A stretch of 63,461 nucleotides of DNA, filler included, from Octopus bimaculoides (lineage: Eukaryota), in the NCBI RefSeq assembly GCF_001194135.2. It is 8 parts of 7 records of this genome, joined end to end, with 100 filler letters (N's around TTAATTAATTAA, not from the genome) between each part and the next. Parts side by side here need not be neighbours in the genome. Positions count along the whole stretch, not along the records: positions 49,902 to 62,063 come from NC_068989.1; positions 62,164 to 63,461 come from NW_026387744.1; 6 more parts are not named here. One strand, 5' to 3'. The notes below the pieces were generated by a model. That model searched no databases. It was not told where the DNA came from and worked only from the letters and a program-made list of their open reading frames with translations. Positions 580-63,461 of this stretch are shown in pieces (position 1 is the stretch's first letter; every line of letters begins with the position of its first letter). The position numbers were made by a program, and so were the translations under genes.

Positions 580-2233
580 AGATTTCCTTTCTTCCATTTT
601 GCATGCCATGTACAGAGACACTATCAATAAGGTGAGGGTTGGCAATGAATACAGTGAATAATTCCAGGTAGATGTAAGGGTCCACCAAAATTCTGTCCTC
701 AGTTCCCTCCTATTTATCATAGTCCTCCAGGCAATAACAGAGGAATTCAAGACAGGATGCCCCCGGGAGCTCCTCTATGCTGATGACCTTGCTCTAATTG
801 CTAAATCACTATCAGAACTAGAAGAAAAGTTTCAGGAATGGAAGCAAGGATTAGAATCAAAGGGCCTAAGAGTCAACCTAGCTAAAACCAAAGTCCTAAT
901 AAGTAGAAAGGCAGACAAATCACAAACAACTTCAGGTAGATGGCCCTGCTCGATCTGTAGAAAAGGCGTAGGTAGAAACTCTATAAGATGTACCCAGTGC
1001 AAGCTATGGACACATAAGAGGTGCAGCAACATCAAAGGCAGGTTAACTAGGAAGTTAGTTTTTGTATGTGGCAGATGTTCAGGTGCAATAAAGACTGTAA
1101 ACAAACAGGAAACAACTTCTATCACATTCCAGGGAGAAAAACTAGACGTAGTTGATAGCTTCCATTACCTATGTGACCAAGTTAGTAGCGGGGAAGGGTG
1201 CTCTGAAAGTGTAGCTGCTAGAATTAGAATAGCCTGAGCAAAGTTCAGAGAGCTCTTACCTCTGCTGGTGACAAAGGGCCTCTCACTCAGAGTAAAAGGC
1301 AGACTGTATGATGCTTGTGTACGAACAGCCATGCTACATGGCAGTGAAACATGGGCCGTGACTGCAGAGGACATGCGTAAGCTTGCAAGGATCAAAGCCA
1401 GTATGCTCTGCTGGATGTGTAATGTCAGTGTGCATGCTAGACAGAGTATAAGTGCCTTGAGAGAAAAGTTGGACCTAAGAAGCATCAGATGTGGTGTGCA
1501 AGAGAGACGACTGCACTGGTATGGTCATGTGGTACGAATGGATGAGGATACCTGTGTGAAAAAGTGTCACACCCTAGCGGTCGAGGGAACCTGTGTAACA
1601 GGTGGACCCAGGAAGACCTGAGATGAGGTGGTAAAGCACGACTTTCGAACATTAGGTCTCACCAAGGCAATGACTAGTGACCGAAACCTTTGGAAATATG
1701 CTGTGCGTGAGAAGACCCAGCAGGCCAAGTGAGACCATAACCCATGGCCTATGTCAGTGGTGTAGCCAGCCCATTTAGGCATACCTTTCTTTCATTGGAC
1801 ACTAAACTATGCTTGTGAAGACCTGTTGAGGCAAGTGAAATTGAATTCGATGACAGCACCGCATGACTGGCTAGTGGAGCACTAAGAGCACCATCCAAGC
1901 ATGATCGTGGCCCATGTGCCGGTGGCAAGTAAAAAGTACCATTTGAGCGTGATCGTTACCAGTGTCGCCTTACTGGCACTTCTGCTGGTAGTACATGGAA
2001 AACACCATTTGGGCATGGCCATTGCCAGTACCACCTGACTGGCCCTTGTGCTGGTGGCACATAAAAGCACCCACTACACTCCCGGAGTGGTTGGCATTAG
2101 GAAGGGCATCCAGCTGTAAAACTCTGCCAGATCAGGTTGGAGCCTGGTGCAGCCATCTGGCTCACTAGTCCCCAGTCAAACCGTCCAACCCATGCCAGCA
2201 TGGAAAGCTGACGTTAAGCGATGATGATGATGA
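580..2233 (+). mobile_element. 5'-truncated RTE-clade LINE: RT remnant with inserted Cys/His finger, repeat-bearing 3' UTR and (GAT)n tail
   Basis: Conceptual translation: ...VHQNSVLSSLLFIIVLQAITEEFKTGCPRELLYADDLALIA...KGLRVNLAKTKVL, then ORF 1268-1621 (KGRLYDACVRTAMLHGSETW...RLHWYGHVVRM), typical RTE C-terminus. In-frame stops present. Confidence 0.9.
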
Positions 2234-2239
2234 TTCTCC

Positions 2240-3400
2240 ACATTTGATAGCCTTTCATCGTATCACTTCCTTGCTTTTTTTTTTCTTCTGGAGTCCCTGA
2301 GTGCAAACATACTATTATCCATCCATACACATTTCTCTCCCACATCTTGATTCTTGCTGACACACTGTCTAGCAATCTGGAACATCTCAAGATTGTGATC
2401 TTCGAACTGTGAGACATTGGCAAACTTCTTCCTGTCTTCTTTTGCATTTGCTAGATAAATGTGTCACTTAGCTTTCCTCAGGTTACCCGAAATAGCTCTT
2501 TACTATCTCTATCTTTCCAATCTTTTCAAACCTGCCTCTTCACTTGTATGGCCCTATATACCCCACTGTTCTGCCACCAAGTCACTTTCCATCTGGCAGA
2601 GACTTTGCCCCAGCCACAGAAAGGTTTCTCGTAAGAATTTTCAAATGTCCGCTATGTTATATGTCACAACCACCTCCTCTTTCTCATCAAATGCTTTAAT
2701 CAGAATGTCTCTAAATCTATGACTGTTTGATGGATCTTTGAGCTTCCATAATTTCCTTTTTCAAACTGGTTTGCATCGCTCTGTCTAACTAGCTCCAAGT
2801 CTGAAGTCACTAACTTCTAACTTATGTTGAGTTTTACATTCCTCAATGGGAAAGGACTTTGCATTCACATGCATCTATCTGTCCCTGTTTCTCATGAGAG
2901 TATAGTCAATATGGCTTGTGTGTTCACCAGATTGATAAGTGATTAGGTGGCTGGCTGGGAGGTTTCCTGAAGTCAGTGTTGCAAACCAGCAAATCATTTG
3001 CATCACAGAACTGCAGAAGCCTTGTTCCATTCTCATTCCTCGTGTCAAAGCCAAAACCTCCTTGCACACCATAAAATCTATTGGTGTGTTTCCCAACATA
3101 TCCACTGAAGTTACCAGCTACAATAATAAGGCCATTGTCCTTCATTTTCAAAGTAGTCCACAGAAGGGACTCATAGAAATAGTCCTTCTGTTCATACTCT
3201 AGTCCAGCATGTGGAGAATATGCAGAGAGAAATGTCACTGTTACATCATATAAGACTTTTCTTAACTTGATAATCCTATCACAAATCTCAGTCACCTTCT
3301 CCGCCAAAAGTATGCCTACCCCACCTTCTGCATCACTACTCCCTATCCAGAAGAATTTATGTCTATGCTCCTTACCTACAGGCAATCTAACTGAGGTTCC
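2240..3400 (-). mobile_element. RTE LINE fragment: AP endonuclease and downstream linker
   Basis: ORFs 2924-3385 and 2875-3105: GGVGILLAE, SAYSPHAG, IIVAGNFSGYVG, RNENGTRLLQFCDANDLLVCNT, SHIDY = APE motifs, frameshifted. Confidence 0.85.
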
Positions 3401-3639
3401 CTGCCATTGTACTGCTTACATACAGCAAACATCCACTCAAGCATTTCAAAAATCTCACCAGACAACCTTTGATAATACCTATATTCATCGCTGTTCTAAG
3501 TTTGCAAACTTCAGGAGAGTGTAAGAGCATGTGAGGATTGTGTTTGGTATTTGTGGAAAAGAAAAGTATTTTTTCGGGCATGCCTGAAGCAGTGGGTCTT
3601 TGCACATGTCACTGAAAGCAGGTATAGATATAAGTATAG

Positions 3640-62055: not shown

Positions 62056-62230
62056 ATATATATNNNNNNNNNNNNNNNNNNNNNNNNNNNNNNNNNNNNN
62101 NNNNNNNTTAATTAATTAANNNNNNNNNNNNNNNNNNNNNNNNNNNNNNNNNNNNNNNNNNNNTGGAGAAAGAGGTGCCCCCTCTAGTTTATACGTTTCG
62201 GAAGCGCTTGTGCGTTTAGGAATTAAAGAA

Positions 62231-62300
62231 TATAACGTCATATATCACGTGATATACAGCATATAACCGGAAGTATACGAGCAGCAGCTCAGTTCCTGTT
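62231..62300 (+). promoter_or_regulatory. Putative Pol II promoter of the parvoviral VP cassette
   Basis: CRE half-site ACGTCA (62235-40), 16-bp palindrome TATATCACGTGATATA with E-box (62241-56), TATAA (62262-66), ETS ACCGGAAGT (62266-74), Inr TCAGTT (62289-94) with its A 29 nt from the TATA start; ATG at 62301. Confidence 0.6.
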
Positions 62301-63461
62301 ATGCAGCCGAGGAAGAAGGATCGGAACGCAGACAAAACAATAGAGTTTCACGTGCCGGGCTATAAATTCTTAGGACCTGGAACTGATCTGAAATACAGAC
62401 GACATCAGATCCCAGTAAACAAATTAGATGCCATAGCCAAAACACATGACCTCGCTTACGAAGATCCTAATAAGGACACCTGGGAATCAGACAAGAAATT
62501 CATCAGAAACGCAGTTAAACAAGGACCCACTGGCCTCCTCGCAGCTGGAGCTATATCTCTTAAACATTATAGCGGACTTGATAAAAAGTTCAGAAGCGCC
62601 AACGGTAATTCTAATAGCGTTACTCATAGCGATTACGATCTTAAAAATATGGCTGAAGCATCGACAAGCAACGAAGGCGAAACAGCTGCATCAGCAGGAT
62701 GGGCTGGAAGTAAACTGCAAACGGCATCGATCCCTGAATCCACTGGAAACTTCGGTGGAGAAGTCTGCTTCAAAAGAAGATTCCGACACGGAGTTAAAAC
62801 AACTCAAATGAACCAAGCTAAAGTAGATTTCACGAAATTCCAAGGCAACGAAGCGGGTTATCACAACGTGGGACACAGCTGCTACGGAGAAGTTACTTCA
62901 GAGGACTACATCATCCCTTACTGGTTGACATCATGGGTAAACCCGATACANNNNNNNNNNCCTTACTGGTTGACATCATGGGTAAACCCGATACAATTCG
63001 AACAAACTATAAAAACGGCAACATCTTACAGAATCAAATCCGTAGGTTTCGAAATATCAAACGTGATGGGTGGCGAATGGACATCTAGAAACAACGAAGA
63101 AGTATTCTTACCAAGCCCTTTACCCTATTTCGAAATATGGGTCGACAACGGCACATACGTCGGACACGGTAACTTAAAAACAATTACGAAAGTACCAAAC
63201 AACGGGTTCTCGTCAATACAACCAGAAACTTTCGCTACTATGGAATTACCCAAATACAAATTCGCATACTGCGCACCAACAGCATNNNNNNNNNNACTAT
63301 GGAATTACCCAAATACAAATTCGCATACTGCGCACCAACAGCATACGTAAATCAGCTTAGCGAGTGCGACCTTGACGCGGACACATTAACATGCACCTCC
63401 AAAATAGTGAGATTCCACGACTGGAGAGAAATGCCAAACGTGCAAAAAGTGAGACAAGGCG
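62301..63461 (+). CDS. VP1: Parvovirus/densovirus capsid protein VP1 with PLA2 domain (open at window edge after collapsing two overlap gaps)
   Basis: PGYKFLGPGT (Ca-binding loop), DAIAKTHDLAY (catalytic HD..Y), downstream D in ESDKKF; Gly/Ala/Ser-rich stretch after M117; jelly-roll-like FKRRFRH and IPYWLTSWVNPIQFEQTIKTATSYRIKSVGFEI. After collapsing the duplications it continues YVNQLSECDLDADTLTCTSKIVRFHDWREMPNVQKVRQG with no stop (at least 352 codons). Confidence 0.9.
62446..62811 (+). CDS. Overlapping +1-frame ORF (121 aa), putative viral membrane accessory protein
   Basis: Lies inside VP1u/VP2 N-terminus; hydrophobic run VILIALLIAITILKIWL followed by basic KHRQATKAK. Confidence 0.45.
   Translation: MTSLTKILIRTPGNQTRNSSETQLNKDPLASSQLELYLLNIIADLIKSSEAPTVILIALLIAITILKIWLKHRQATKAKQLHQQDGLEVNCKRHRSLNPLETSVEKSASKEDSDTELKQLK

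What the first reader, a model, noticed from the sequence alone, without database searches (positions are those of the whole stretch)
62164..63461. Apparently intact PLA2-bearing parvovirus/densovirus capsid cassette in a cephalopod-like assembly
Seen: unlike every other coding relic in the window, this ORF has no genuine stop or frameshift. It keeps the full parvoviral PLA2 motif set (GYKFLGPG, HDLAY, downstream D) and the 1.3 kb is A/C-rich, CpG-containing and free of microsatellites. Established: this PLA2 motif in VP1u is diagnostic of Parvoviridae, and hamaparvoviruses lack it, so a Densovirinae- or Parvovirinae-type virus is indicated. Inference: either a very young endogenous viral element or an exogenous virus co-assembled from the animal. 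The segment starts right after an artificial linker, so no host junction is visible on the left. Whether it has already been catalogued was not checked.
Basis: partly seen in the sequence, partly recalled or inferred. Interest (0 to 1): 0.88.

Follow-up and report, generated by a model that had tools for sequence, protein, structure and literature searches.

The report
Intact cephalopod parvovirus capsid gene fragment
This 1.3-kb piece is the unbroken front 58% of a parvovirus capsid gene with its promoter, from a barely described virus lineage that is buried in octopus and cuttlefish genomes and whose relatives carry the capsid gene ahead of the replication gene, the reverse of the usual parvovirus order.

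Summary
Both N gaps are unmerged contig overlaps: exact 35-nt and 49-nt repeats flank them, and every relative has that stretch once. The frame from ATG 62301 stays open for 352 non-redundant codons and runs off the right edge.

- **Identity.** The N-terminus is a parvoviral PLA2 domain (Pfam PF08398, 40 bits, cut-off 23.9) with the catalytic residues. The rest is colinear with 606-621-aa full-length relatives. The predicted fold of one of them matches only Parvoviridae capsids.
- **Relatives.** About 54 protein clusters, nearly all unnamed fragments from read-archive assemblies. The only named ones are hypothetical proteins of Octopus vulgaris and Acanthosepion pharaonis. No subfamily can be assigned.
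- **New here.**
  - Relatives in six lineages have VP followed by NS1 on the same strand.
  - A nested +1 ORF (62446-62811) for a small membrane-type protein is conserved.
  - An internal Met (62649) is present in 16 of 16 relatives.
  - A promoter-like upstream region and a roughly 40-nt element are conserved.
- **Unresolved.** Young endogenous copy (about 0.5) or exogenous virus (about 0.35). The piece has no host junction, and its left edge lies inside the element.

The parts
62164..62300 (+). Upstream non-coding region of the VP gene. The piece starts inside a conserved element (62164-62190, with a 5-bp-stem hairpin at 62171-62185). Then come ACGTCA (62234-62239) and CACGTG (62246-62251) in a palindromic stretch, a TATA-like CATATAA (62260-62266), and an initiator-like TCAGTT (62289-62294) about 30 nt further on and about 10 nt before the ATG.
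   Evidence: Alignments with the upstream regions of L001, L002, L003 and L007. An exact 16-nt core is shared with L001, L002 and L003. The L002 and L007 upstream regions match at 88% over 41 nt. Fold. Reading these motifs as a Pol II promoter is inference.
62301..63461 (+). VP1 (capsid protein) reading frame: 352 non-redundant codons, no stop, cut off by the right edge of the piece. It is read in three overlapping sub-pieces (62301-62950, 62961-63285, 63296-63461).
   Evidence: Colinear with P0004: aa 14-208, 201-306 and 295-348. dN/dS is 0.13-0.19 against L002 and L001.
62343..62600 (+). Phospholipase A2 domain of the VP1 unique region (aa 15 to about 100), with the Gly-x-Gly calcium loop, His-Asp, Tyr and the downstream Asp.
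   Evidence: PF08398, E = 4.6e-10. PDB VP1 hits over aa 2-57. Column counts. Helices 30-99 have pLDDT 76-86 in the window's own model.
62446..62811 (+). Nested ORF in the +1 frame of VP (121 aa, ATG start). It encodes a small protein with one hydrophobic, membrane-type segment.
   Evidence: The +1 frame is open for 79-124 codons in all 7 lineages compared, against 37-51 codons in the +2 frame. Synonymous-codon shuffles reach the observed length in 0-41 of 2000 trials. Alignment A7. No Pfam family.
62649..62651 (+). Conserved internal ATG (Met117), a likely start of the shorter major capsid protein lacking the PLA2 domain.
   Evidence: Met is present in 16 of 16 family rows in an otherwise variable linker. 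Its role as a start codon is inferred.
62748..63461 (+). N-terminal half of the capsid jelly-roll body (from about aa 150 onward). This is the most conserved part of the family.
   Evidence: Identity is 68-86% to the nearest relatives (L001, L002, L007) and 52-58% to the full-length VPs. The corresponding region of the P0004 model is strand-rich with pLDDT 60-88 and matches parvovirus capsids.
62951..62960 (.). Assembly gap 1 (10 N) between two contigs that overlap by 35 nt (62916-62950 equals 62961-62995). No sequence is missing.
   Evidence: Single copy in the relatives.
63286..63295 (.). Assembly gap 2 (10 N) between two contigs that overlap by 49 nt (63237-63285 equals 63296-63344). No sequence is missing.
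   Evidence: Single copy in the relatives.

Best explanation
**What it is (about 0.95).** The piece is the promoter region and front 58% of the capsid (VP1) gene of a deep-branching parvovirus lineage associated with cephalopods.

**How the gene works (inferred from the anatomy)**
- A TATA/initiator-type promoter sits just inside a hairpin-rich genome end and gives a transcript with a very short leader.
- The first ATG gives VP1. Its N-terminal phospholipase A2 domain is the device that parvovirus particles use to breach the endosomal membrane.
- A conserved Met at aa 117 probably starts the shorter major capsid protein.
- An ATG in the +1 frame gives a small membrane-type accessory protein.
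- The sequence from about aa 150 onward is the first half of the jelly-roll that builds the shell.
- In the relatives the capsid gene is followed on the same strand by NS1 (HUH nuclease plus SF3 helicase).

**Status of this copy (about 0.5).** It is most likely an endogenous copy in the animal's genome that is either very young or kept intact by selection.
For: **Identity**
- PF08398 scores above its cut-off, and PDB sequence hits are parvovirus VP1 chains only.
- The piece is colinear with the 606-621-aa VPs.
- The fold of relative P0004 matches Parvoviridae capsids only, at E 1e-8 to 1e-15.
- Parvo_NS1 (PF01057) lies next to VP in relatives, with an HUH-type motif in the NS1 N-terminus.

**Real, selected gene**
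- 352 open codons, chance about 8e-10.
- dN/dS is 0.13-0.19 with saturated dS.
- The nested ORF is kept in 7 lineages.
- Met117 is present in 16 of 16 rows.
- The upstream motifs are conserved.

**Endogenous status**
- The three nearest relatives are all damaged copies.
  - L001: VP has 2 frame changes, and the NS1 part has 1 stop.
  - L002 and L003: 1 frame change and 2 stops.
  - L007: 2 stops.
- L007 lies in an 84-Mb O. vulgaris chromosome with T-rich host DNA starting about 165 nt upstream of the ATG.
- L008 is a damaged copy (2 frame changes and 4 stops in VP) inside a 76.7-kb contig.
- Most of the 54 family clusters are short fragments, and some are multi-copy. For example, 14 near-identical 162-aa members each occur on up to 7 contigs.
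- The piece is a tiny scaffold of three contigs with unmerged overlaps, as expected where near-identical copies or variants break an assembly graph (inference).
Against: **Nothing in the piece shows integration**
- There is no host flank, and the left edge falls inside the conserved viral element.
- The VP frame, the nested ORF with its ATG, the internal Met and the promoter motifs are all intact.
- 5.2% of single-base changes would create a stop. The chance of staying open is only 0.06 after 5% neutral divergence, and lower if indels are counted.
- Any neutral residence in a genome must therefore have been short, which fits an exogenous virus equally well.

**Related evidence for free genomes**
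- Full-length relatives with an intact VP sit on 3.8-4.5-kb contigs that all start 180-340 nt upstream of VP, as free viral genomes would. In L004 and L005 the downstream NS1 is called whole; in L009 and L010 it is an open 559-565-aa ORF that runs off the contig end.

**Limits of the tests**
- CpG content does not discriminate: the damaged O. vulgaris copy also has observed/expected 1.0.
- The jelly-roll fold was shown on a relative (model pLDDT 57, TM about 0.3), not on the window's own partial protein. The window's own model is confident only in the PLA2 domain.
Confidence: 0.5

Rival explanations
1. The piece comes from an exogenous (or episomal, persistent) parvovirus that infected the sequenced animal and was co-assembled with host DNA. 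The gene is fully functional in a replicating virus.
For: - No disruption in 352 codons. The nested ORF, internal Met and promoter motifs are intact.
- The neutral-decay bound allows less than about 5% unconstrained divergence.
- There is no host flank.
- Relatives with an intact VP, followed by an NS1 that is called whole (L004, L005) or is still open where the contig ends (L009, L010), occur on genome-sized contigs (3.8-4.5 kb) with a common start point, in several independent read sets.
- Singleton changes on the window's own branch are less skewed to non-synonymous (25:18) than on the clearly dead copies L001 (43:12) and L007 (67:35). This is weak evidence.
Against: - The three closest relatives are all damaged copies, and L007 at least is chromosomal.
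- The family is widely endogenised.
- A well-covered virus usually assembles into one contig, not three fragments with unmerged overlaps (inference).
- No member was found in IMG/VR or in the JGI metagenome scan.
Confidence: 0.35
2. The piece is an old endogenous copy that the host has co-opted. The capsid/PLA2 gene is kept open by host-level purifying selection and expressed for a host function such as antiviral interference.
For: - An open frame next to damaged paralogues.
- L006 shows a contig with an intact 606-aa VP whose neighbouring NS1 is interrupted by one stop. That pattern fits selective retention of VP alone.
- dN/dS is low.
Against: - The low dN/dS is explained by divergence as viruses, since dS is saturated.
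- Conservation of the nested accessory ORF, the internal start and the viral promoter is what a virus needs, not a host gene.
- No orthologous intact copy at a shared host locus was seen.
- The nearest protein in about 15 billion is only 63% identical.
Confidence: 0.1
3. The piece is not viral: a cellular secreted PLA2 gene or a chance open frame.
For: None found. The window's own model gave no significant structural match of any kind.
Against: - No cellular PLA2 family appears in Pfam.
- PDB sequence hits are VP1 chains only.
- The chance of an ORF this long is about 8e-10.
- NS1 lies next to the homologous gene in relatives.
- The capsid fold matches Parvoviridae capsids.
Confidence: 0.01

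Closest known systems
Parvoviridae VP1 capsid proteins with a PLA2-bearing unique region (best sequence and fold matches: dependoparvovirus, bocaparvovirus and erythroparvovirus capsids in the PDB; unclassified 'Parvoviridae sp.' and densovirus VPs in BFVD)
   Same: - An N-terminal PLA2 domain with the calcium loop and the His-Asp/Asp residues.
- A variable linker with an internal start.
- A large jelly-roll body.
- NS1 with PF01057 in the same genome, and a genome-sized unit of about 4-4.5 kb.
   Different: - Outside the PLA2 domain there is no sequence-detectable similarity to any solved capsid or to any Pfam coat family. Fold matches have 10-16% identity.
- In relatives the gene order is VP then NS1 on one strand.
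- To my knowledge, known monosense parvoviruses have NS first, and ambisense densoviruses have the two genes on opposite strands.
Endogenous parvoviral elements / parvovirus-related sequences of molluscs (Francois et al. 2016, PMC5013282)
   Same: That survey lists an NS1-like sequence in Octopus bimaculoides. It states that mollusc sequences resemble vertebrate parvoviruses more than densoviruses and branch outside all known genera. This matches the mixed but Parvovirinae-leaning structural hits found here.
   Different: The survey records short NS1 fragments only. It does not describe the capsid gene, the gene order, the nested ORF or intact copies. I did not test whether its octopus sequence belongs to this same lineage.
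Octopus vulgaris CAI9735766.1 (OX597831.1, 6.79 Mb) and Acanthosepion pharaonis CAE1233600.1, both annotated as hypothetical proteins
   Same: - They are true homologues. The O. vulgaris locus is 54% (piece 1) and 68% (piece 2) identical to the window protein.
- It is colinear with a full 608-aa VP.
- It keeps the same upstream roughly 40-nt element.
   Different: They are chromosomal and damaged: the O. vulgaris VP has 2 stops. The window copy is unbroken and has no visible host flank.
Small accessory proteins nested in parvovirus capsid genes (SAT of protoparvoviruses, MAAP and AAP of dependoparvoviruses)
   Same: A short ORF in an alternative frame inside the 5' part of the VP gene, encoding a protein with a membrane-type hydrophobic segment. 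This is a resemblance in how it works, recalled from my own knowledge of those proteins.
   Different: No homology was detected: no Pfam family matched. I did not compare it with those proteins directly, so membership is not claimed.
Ambisense densoviruses
   Same: The VP gene starts a short distance inside a genome terminus. Its promoter lies next to hairpin-forming sequence, and the leader is very short.
   Different: In this lineage NS1 lies downstream on the same strand, not on the opposite strand.

Membership tests
Parvoviridae (VP1 with PLA2) | Parvovirus-type PLA2 domain in the N-terminus of the largest capsid protein, scoring above the curated threshold | tested here: met
   PF08398 scores 40.1 bits against a cut-off of 23.9, E = 4.6e-10. 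PDB sequence hits are VP1 chains only.
Parvoviridae (VP1 with PLA2) | Calcium-binding Gly-x-Gly loop, catalytic His-Asp, Tyr and downstream Asp all present | tested here: met
   Window residues G25, G27, H49, D50, Y53 and D64. They are shared by 17-21 of the 19-21 family rows covering each column and are invariant or nearly invariant in A9. Enzyme activity was not tested.
Parvoviridae (capsid) | Jelly-roll capsid body of the parvovirus type | tested here: met
   Tested on the colinear full-length relative P0004. Foldseek gave 185 PDB hits at E <= 1e-3. The 50 best PDB matches listed and the BFVD top 50 are all parvovirus capsids, over 440-790 alignment columns. The model is weak (pLDDT 57, TM about 0.3). 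The window's own partial protein gave no usable model outside the PLA2 domain.
Parvoviridae (genome) | NS1 with an SF3 helicase (Parvo_NS1) and an HUH nuclease in the same genome | tested here: met
   Met in relatives only. PF01057 hits the gene next to VP in L004, L005 and L006. An HUH-type motif is present in the NS1 N-terminus. NS1 homology lies downstream of VP in L001, L008 and L009-L011. The window piece ends before that point.
Parvoviridae (genome) | Canonical arrangement: NS genes at the 5' side of VP (monosense), or NS and VP on opposite strands (ambisense) | tested here: not met
   Eight loci (six lineages) have VP then NS1 on the same strand, 38 to about 160 nt apart, with no NS upstream of VP. 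That this arrangement is unprecedented rests on my own knowledge and on literature searches that found nothing.
Parvoviridae (genome) | Linear ssDNA of 4-6 kb with terminal hairpins | tested here: inconclusive
   Relatives' contigs are 3.8-4.5 kb. L002 1-180, upstream of VP, folds far better than shuffles (z = -7.0), but L001's upstream region does not. The far ends were not inspected, because whole contigs were not fetched. Strandedness cannot be tested here.
Subfamily Densovirinae or Parvovirinae | Placement by NS1 helicase phylogeny (the ICTV criterion) | not tested
   I did not hold a full NS1, and no reference set was available. Capsid fold hits come from both subfamilies, and the PLA2 sequence hits are to Parvovirinae.
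Endogenous viral element | Virus-host junction in a host chromosome | not testable with these tools
   The window piece has no flank, and its left edge lies inside the conserved element. The feature is met for relatives L007 (84-Mb chromosome) and L008 (76.7-kb contig).
Nested accessory proteins of parvovirus VP genes (SAT/MAAP type) | Sequence homology to a described accessory protein | tested here: inconclusive
   No Pfam family matched any of the 7 nested-ORF products, and no direct comparison was possible. Only position, frame and the hydrophobic segment resemble those proteins.

The most novel reading that the evidence does not exclude
The window copy belongs to a still-circulating cephalopod parvovirus lineage whose roughly 4.5-kb genome is arranged as terminus, single promoter, VP (with a nested membrane-protein ORF), then NS1, all on one strand. 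That is the mirror image of every described monosense parvovirus, and it would merit a taxon above genus level. The same lineage would have seeded many endogenous copies across octopuses and cuttlefish.
Probability: 0.35. Interest if true: 0.75.

Novelty: new variant of a known kind. Interest (0 to 1): 0.62.

Why it matters
- **Host range.** I found no paper describing a cephalopod parvovirus. The only literature trace found is one octopus NS1 fragment in a 2016 supplement.
- **What this piece offers.** It is an unbroken capsid-gene front end of that lineage. It ties together about 54 unnamed protein clusters in public data, including hypothetical proteins in the O. vulgaris and A. pharaonis genome annotations.
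- **Gene order.** The VP-before-NS1 order seen in relatives raises two questions. How are replication proteins expressed when the capsid gene comes first? How fixed is the parvovirus genome plan?
- **Uses for dating and health monitoring.** The many damaged copies give material for dating virus-cephalopod association. An intact copy may flag a current infection in animals that are farmed and used as laboratory models.

Tried and rejected
- **IMG/VR viral contigs.** Two protein-pattern scans and one exact DNA scan found no relative.
- **JGI metagenome contigs.** One scan found nothing.
- **Capsid body against Pfam and PDB sequences.** No hit. The family profile against PDB sequences matched only the PLA2 region.
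- **First two word-indexed protein searches.** They returned only 2 hits and a self-hit. The exhaustive profile search was needed to find the family.
- **P0034.** This 1106-aa hit with 9 matched stretches is a bacterial repeat protein (DUF7507, DUF11), a false positive.
- **Structure of the window's own piece 1.** Only the PLA2 helices are confident, and Foldseek gave nothing below E = 4.
- **NS1 N-terminal fragments.** No hit in Pfam or the PDB.
- **Run accessions of the relatives in the paper library.** No paper, so the species behind SRR11869391/94, ERR12945498, ERR3431203 and ERR12921337-41 remain unidentified.
- **Singleton N:S counts per terminal branch.** Too affected by synonymous saturation to decide the window's status.
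- **CpG content as an age marker.** Rejected, because the damaged O. vulgaris copy has the same ratio.
- **Tandem duplication as the reading of the repeats at the gaps.** Rejected, because all relatives have one copy.
- **Replication concatemers or head-to-tail circles as the cause of the VP-then-NS1 order.** Rejected. The spacer is as short as 38 nt, which leaves no room for termini. The order also holds in a damaged copy inside a 76.7-kb contig.
Full report
**1. The gaps**

The piece (62164-63461) is three contigs joined by two runs of 10 N.
- The 35 nt before the first gap are repeated exactly after it. The 49 nt before the second gap are repeated exactly after it.
- Each sub-piece has one stop-free frame in its coding part. 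The repeated stretch begins at codon position 1 on both sides of both gaps, so the same protein frame runs through all three.
- Independent relatives settle what the repeats are. L001, L002, L003, L007 and the full-length protein P0004 all align across both junctions with one copy of the repeated stretch.

The gaps are therefore unmerged contig overlaps, and nothing is missing. As written, the second gap plus its repeat is 59 nt. That shifts the frame and creates the false stop in the mechanical ORF list. I did not build a merged sequence. All searches used the sub-pieces apart.

**2. The observation**

- From ATG 62301 the frame is open for 352 non-redundant codons and runs off the right edge. 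Random sequence of this composition would do that with probability about 8e-10.
- The N-terminus matches the parvoviral PLA2-like domain PF08398 at E = 4.6e-10 and 40.1 bits, against a cut-off of 23.9.
- PDB sequence hits are parvovirus VP1 chains only, and only over aa 2-57.
- The calcium-loop glycines, His49-Asp50, Tyr53 and Asp64 are present. They are shared by 17-21 of the 19-21 family rows that cover each column.

**3. The family**

The word-indexed search found only two fragments, at 54% and 63% identity. IMG/VR and JGI metagenomes held nothing.

An exhaustive profile search with the capsid body found 40 representatives. A follow-up profile search found 54 clusters.
- Nearly all are short, unnamed products of read-archive assemblies.
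- The only named ones are hypothetical proteins of Octopus vulgaris (CAI9735766.1, on an 84-Mb chromosome) and Acanthosepion pharaonis.
- Five clusters are full-length VPs of 606-621 aa. The window's three sub-pieces are colinear with aa 14-348 of one of them, P0004. The window therefore holds about 58% of the gene.

The nearest relatives of the window copy are:

| Relative | Source | Identity, piece 1 | Identity, piece 2 |
|---|---|---|---|
| L002/L003 | SRR11869391/94 | 59% | 82-86% |
| L007 | O. vulgaris locus | 54% | 68% |
| L001 | SRR11869391 | 52-81% | 73% |

The exact window protein is not in the collection of about 15 billion proteins.

**4. The capsid fold**

Outside the PLA2 domain, no Pfam family or PDB sequence matches. 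An AlphaFold2 model of P0004, built with the family alignment, is of modest quality (pLDDT 57, pTM 0.43). The strand-rich region corresponding to window aa 150-352 reaches pLDDT 60-88.

Foldseek nevertheless gives 185 PDB matches at E <= 1e-3. The 50 best matches listed are all parvovirus capsids (adeno-associated viruses, bocaviruses, B19, a crane parvovirus), over 440-600 columns at 10-14% identity.

The 50 best BFVD matches are all Parvoviridae, nearly all named capsid proteins, from both subfamilies. No subfamily can be named.

**5. Genome context in relatives**

The window ends inside VP, so context comes from relatives. I kept flanks short so as not to hold a whole viral genome.

| Locus | Context | What follows VP on the same strand |
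|---|---|---|
| L004, L005, L006 | Three read sets | A gene carrying Parvo_NS1 (PF01057), 38 to about 160 nt downstream |
| L009-L011 | Further read sets | A long ORF with NS1 homology |
| L001 | The window's own subclade | NS1 homology |
| L008 | Damaged copy inside a 76.7-kb contig | NS1 homology |

- The NS1 N-terminus carries an HUH-type motif.
- All these contigs begin 180-340 nt upstream of the VP start, and no NS gene lies upstream.
- To my knowledge every described monosense parvovirus has NS before VP, and ambisense ones use opposite strands. Literature searches found no description of a VP-first order or of cephalopod parvoviruses.
- The only trace found is Francois et al. 2016 (PMC5013282). 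It lists an NS1-like sequence from O. bimaculoides and notes that mollusc sequences branch outside known genera.

**6. Upstream region**

The 137 nt before the ATG align with the relatives.
- The window, L001, L002/L003 and the O. vulgaris locus share a roughly 40-nt element containing a small hairpin. L002 and L007 match at 88% over 41 nt. That is far more conserved than the coding DNA, which is about 67% identical.
- Next come ACGTCA/CACGTG motifs, a TATA-like box, and an initiator-like TCAGTT about 30 nt further on and about 10 nt before the ATG.
- In L002 the 180 nt further upstream fold into hairpins far better than shuffles (z = -7.0). L001 does not show this.
- In the O. vulgaris chromosome, homology stops about 165 nt before the ATG, where T-rich host DNA begins.

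I infer that the VP promoter lies just inside a hairpin-bearing genome end. The window piece starts inside the conserved element, so its left edge is an assembly break and not a host junction.

**7.

*Nested ORF.* A +1-frame ORF lies inside the VP1-unique and linker region (62446-62811, 121 aa).
- The +1 frame is open for 79-124 codons in all seven lineages compared. The +2 frame never exceeds 51 codons.
- Shuffling synonymous VP codons reaches the observed length in only 0-41 of 2000 trials per sequence.
- The products align and share an N-x-T site, a hydrophobic segment of about 19 aa, a Trp followed by basic residues, and an Asp-Gly pair that is nearly invariant (Gly in all seven).
- No Pfam family matches.
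- By position and character it resembles the small membrane-associated proteins nested in other parvovirus capsid genes. This is an analogy, not shown homology.

*Internal start.* Met117 (62649-62651) is present in 16 of 16 rows in an otherwise variable linker. It probably starts the shorter major capsid protein.

**8. Selection and age**

- Against L002 and L001 the window gene has dN/dS of 0.13-0.19 with saturated dS of 1.5-1.8. The lineages therefore diverged under strong constraint.
- 5.2% of possible single-base changes would make a stop. The frame would stay open with probability 0.33 after 2% neutral divergence, 0.06 after 5%, and much less if indels are counted.
- The relatives are damaged.

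| Copy | VP | NS1 part |
|---|---|---|
| L001 | 2 frame changes | 1 stop |
| L002/L003 | 1 frame change, 2 stops | not held |
| L007 | 2 stops | no homology found |
| L008 | 2 frame changes, 4 stops | not counted |
| L006 | intact | 1 stop |

**9. Status of the window copy**

- *For an endogenous copy:* the nearest relatives are dead copies, and one is certainly chromosomal. The family is widely and repeatedly endogenised, with multi-copy clusters. The piece is a tiny scaffold of three contigs that failed to merge.
- *For an exogenous virus:* everything testable is intact, no host flank exists, and genome-sized relatives' contigs exist in which VP is intact and NS1 is called whole or still open at the contig end.
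- *Co-option* is possible but is the least supported.

I put these at about 0.5, 0.35 and 0.1. Only the source animal's reads can decide.

**10. Verdict**

The piece is an unbroken capsid-gene front end from a cephalopod-associated, deep-branching parvovirus lineage. That lineage is almost undescribed. Its relatives show an unusual VP-then-NS1 order and a conserved nested ORF.

I file it as a new variant of a known kind. The window alone shows only the capsid part.

Noticed in passing
window 62446-62811 (+1 frame of VP); also L001 343-663, L002 462-815, L004 409-702, L005 474-698, L006 521-778, L007 1631-1948: A conserved nested ORF encodes a small protein of about 75-121 aa with one hydrophobic, membrane-type segment. 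Its length is significant against synonymous-codon shuffles. In the O. vulgaris copy the frame is still open but the start codon is gone.
   Followed up: yes
L004 228-2654, L005 251-2716, L006 337-2757, L009/L010 182-2617, L011 184-2562, L001 201-2586, L008 about 1023-3412: In every relative with enough sequence, VP is followed by NS1 on the same strand, with a short spacer (38 to about 160 nt) and nothing NS-like upstream. This is the reverse of the canonical parvovirus order.
   Followed up: partly
window 62164-62190; L001 about 50-90; L002 136-176; L007 1357-1397: A roughly 40-nt non-coding element with a small hairpin lies upstream of the VP promoter. It is much better conserved than the coding DNA. 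It may be a cis-acting replication or packaging signal at the inner edge of the terminal region.
   Followed up: partly
L002 1-180: The region upstream of the VP promoter forms several strong hairpins (DNA fold z = -7.0). This fits the remains of a terminal hairpin. L001's upstream region shows no such signal.
   Followed up: partly
window 62649-62651: An internal Met is conserved in 16 of 16 relatives within a variable linker. It is a likely start of the PLA2-less major capsid protein.
   Followed up: partly
L006 (ERR12921337): This contig has an intact 606-aa VP, but its neighbouring NS1 is interrupted by one stop. It could be a defective genome, an endogenous copy with VP selectively kept, or a read-assembly error.
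   Followed up: no
L006 and L009-L011 (runs ERR12921337, -38, -40, -41): Two clearly different full-length VPs (606 aa and 611 aa) occur in neighbouring runs of what looks like one sequencing project. More than one lineage may coexist in one host species. The species is unknown.
   Followed up: no
protein cluster of P0011: Fourteen near-identical 162-aa capsid fragments each occur on up to 7 contigs. This is a multi-copy set, suggesting amplification or repeated integration in some genome.
   Followed up: no
L007 1-1335 (O. vulgaris OX597831.1): The host DNA next to the endogenous copy is extremely T-rich (48% T, 21% G+C), and the composition switches sharply at the element's left boundary.
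   Followed up: no
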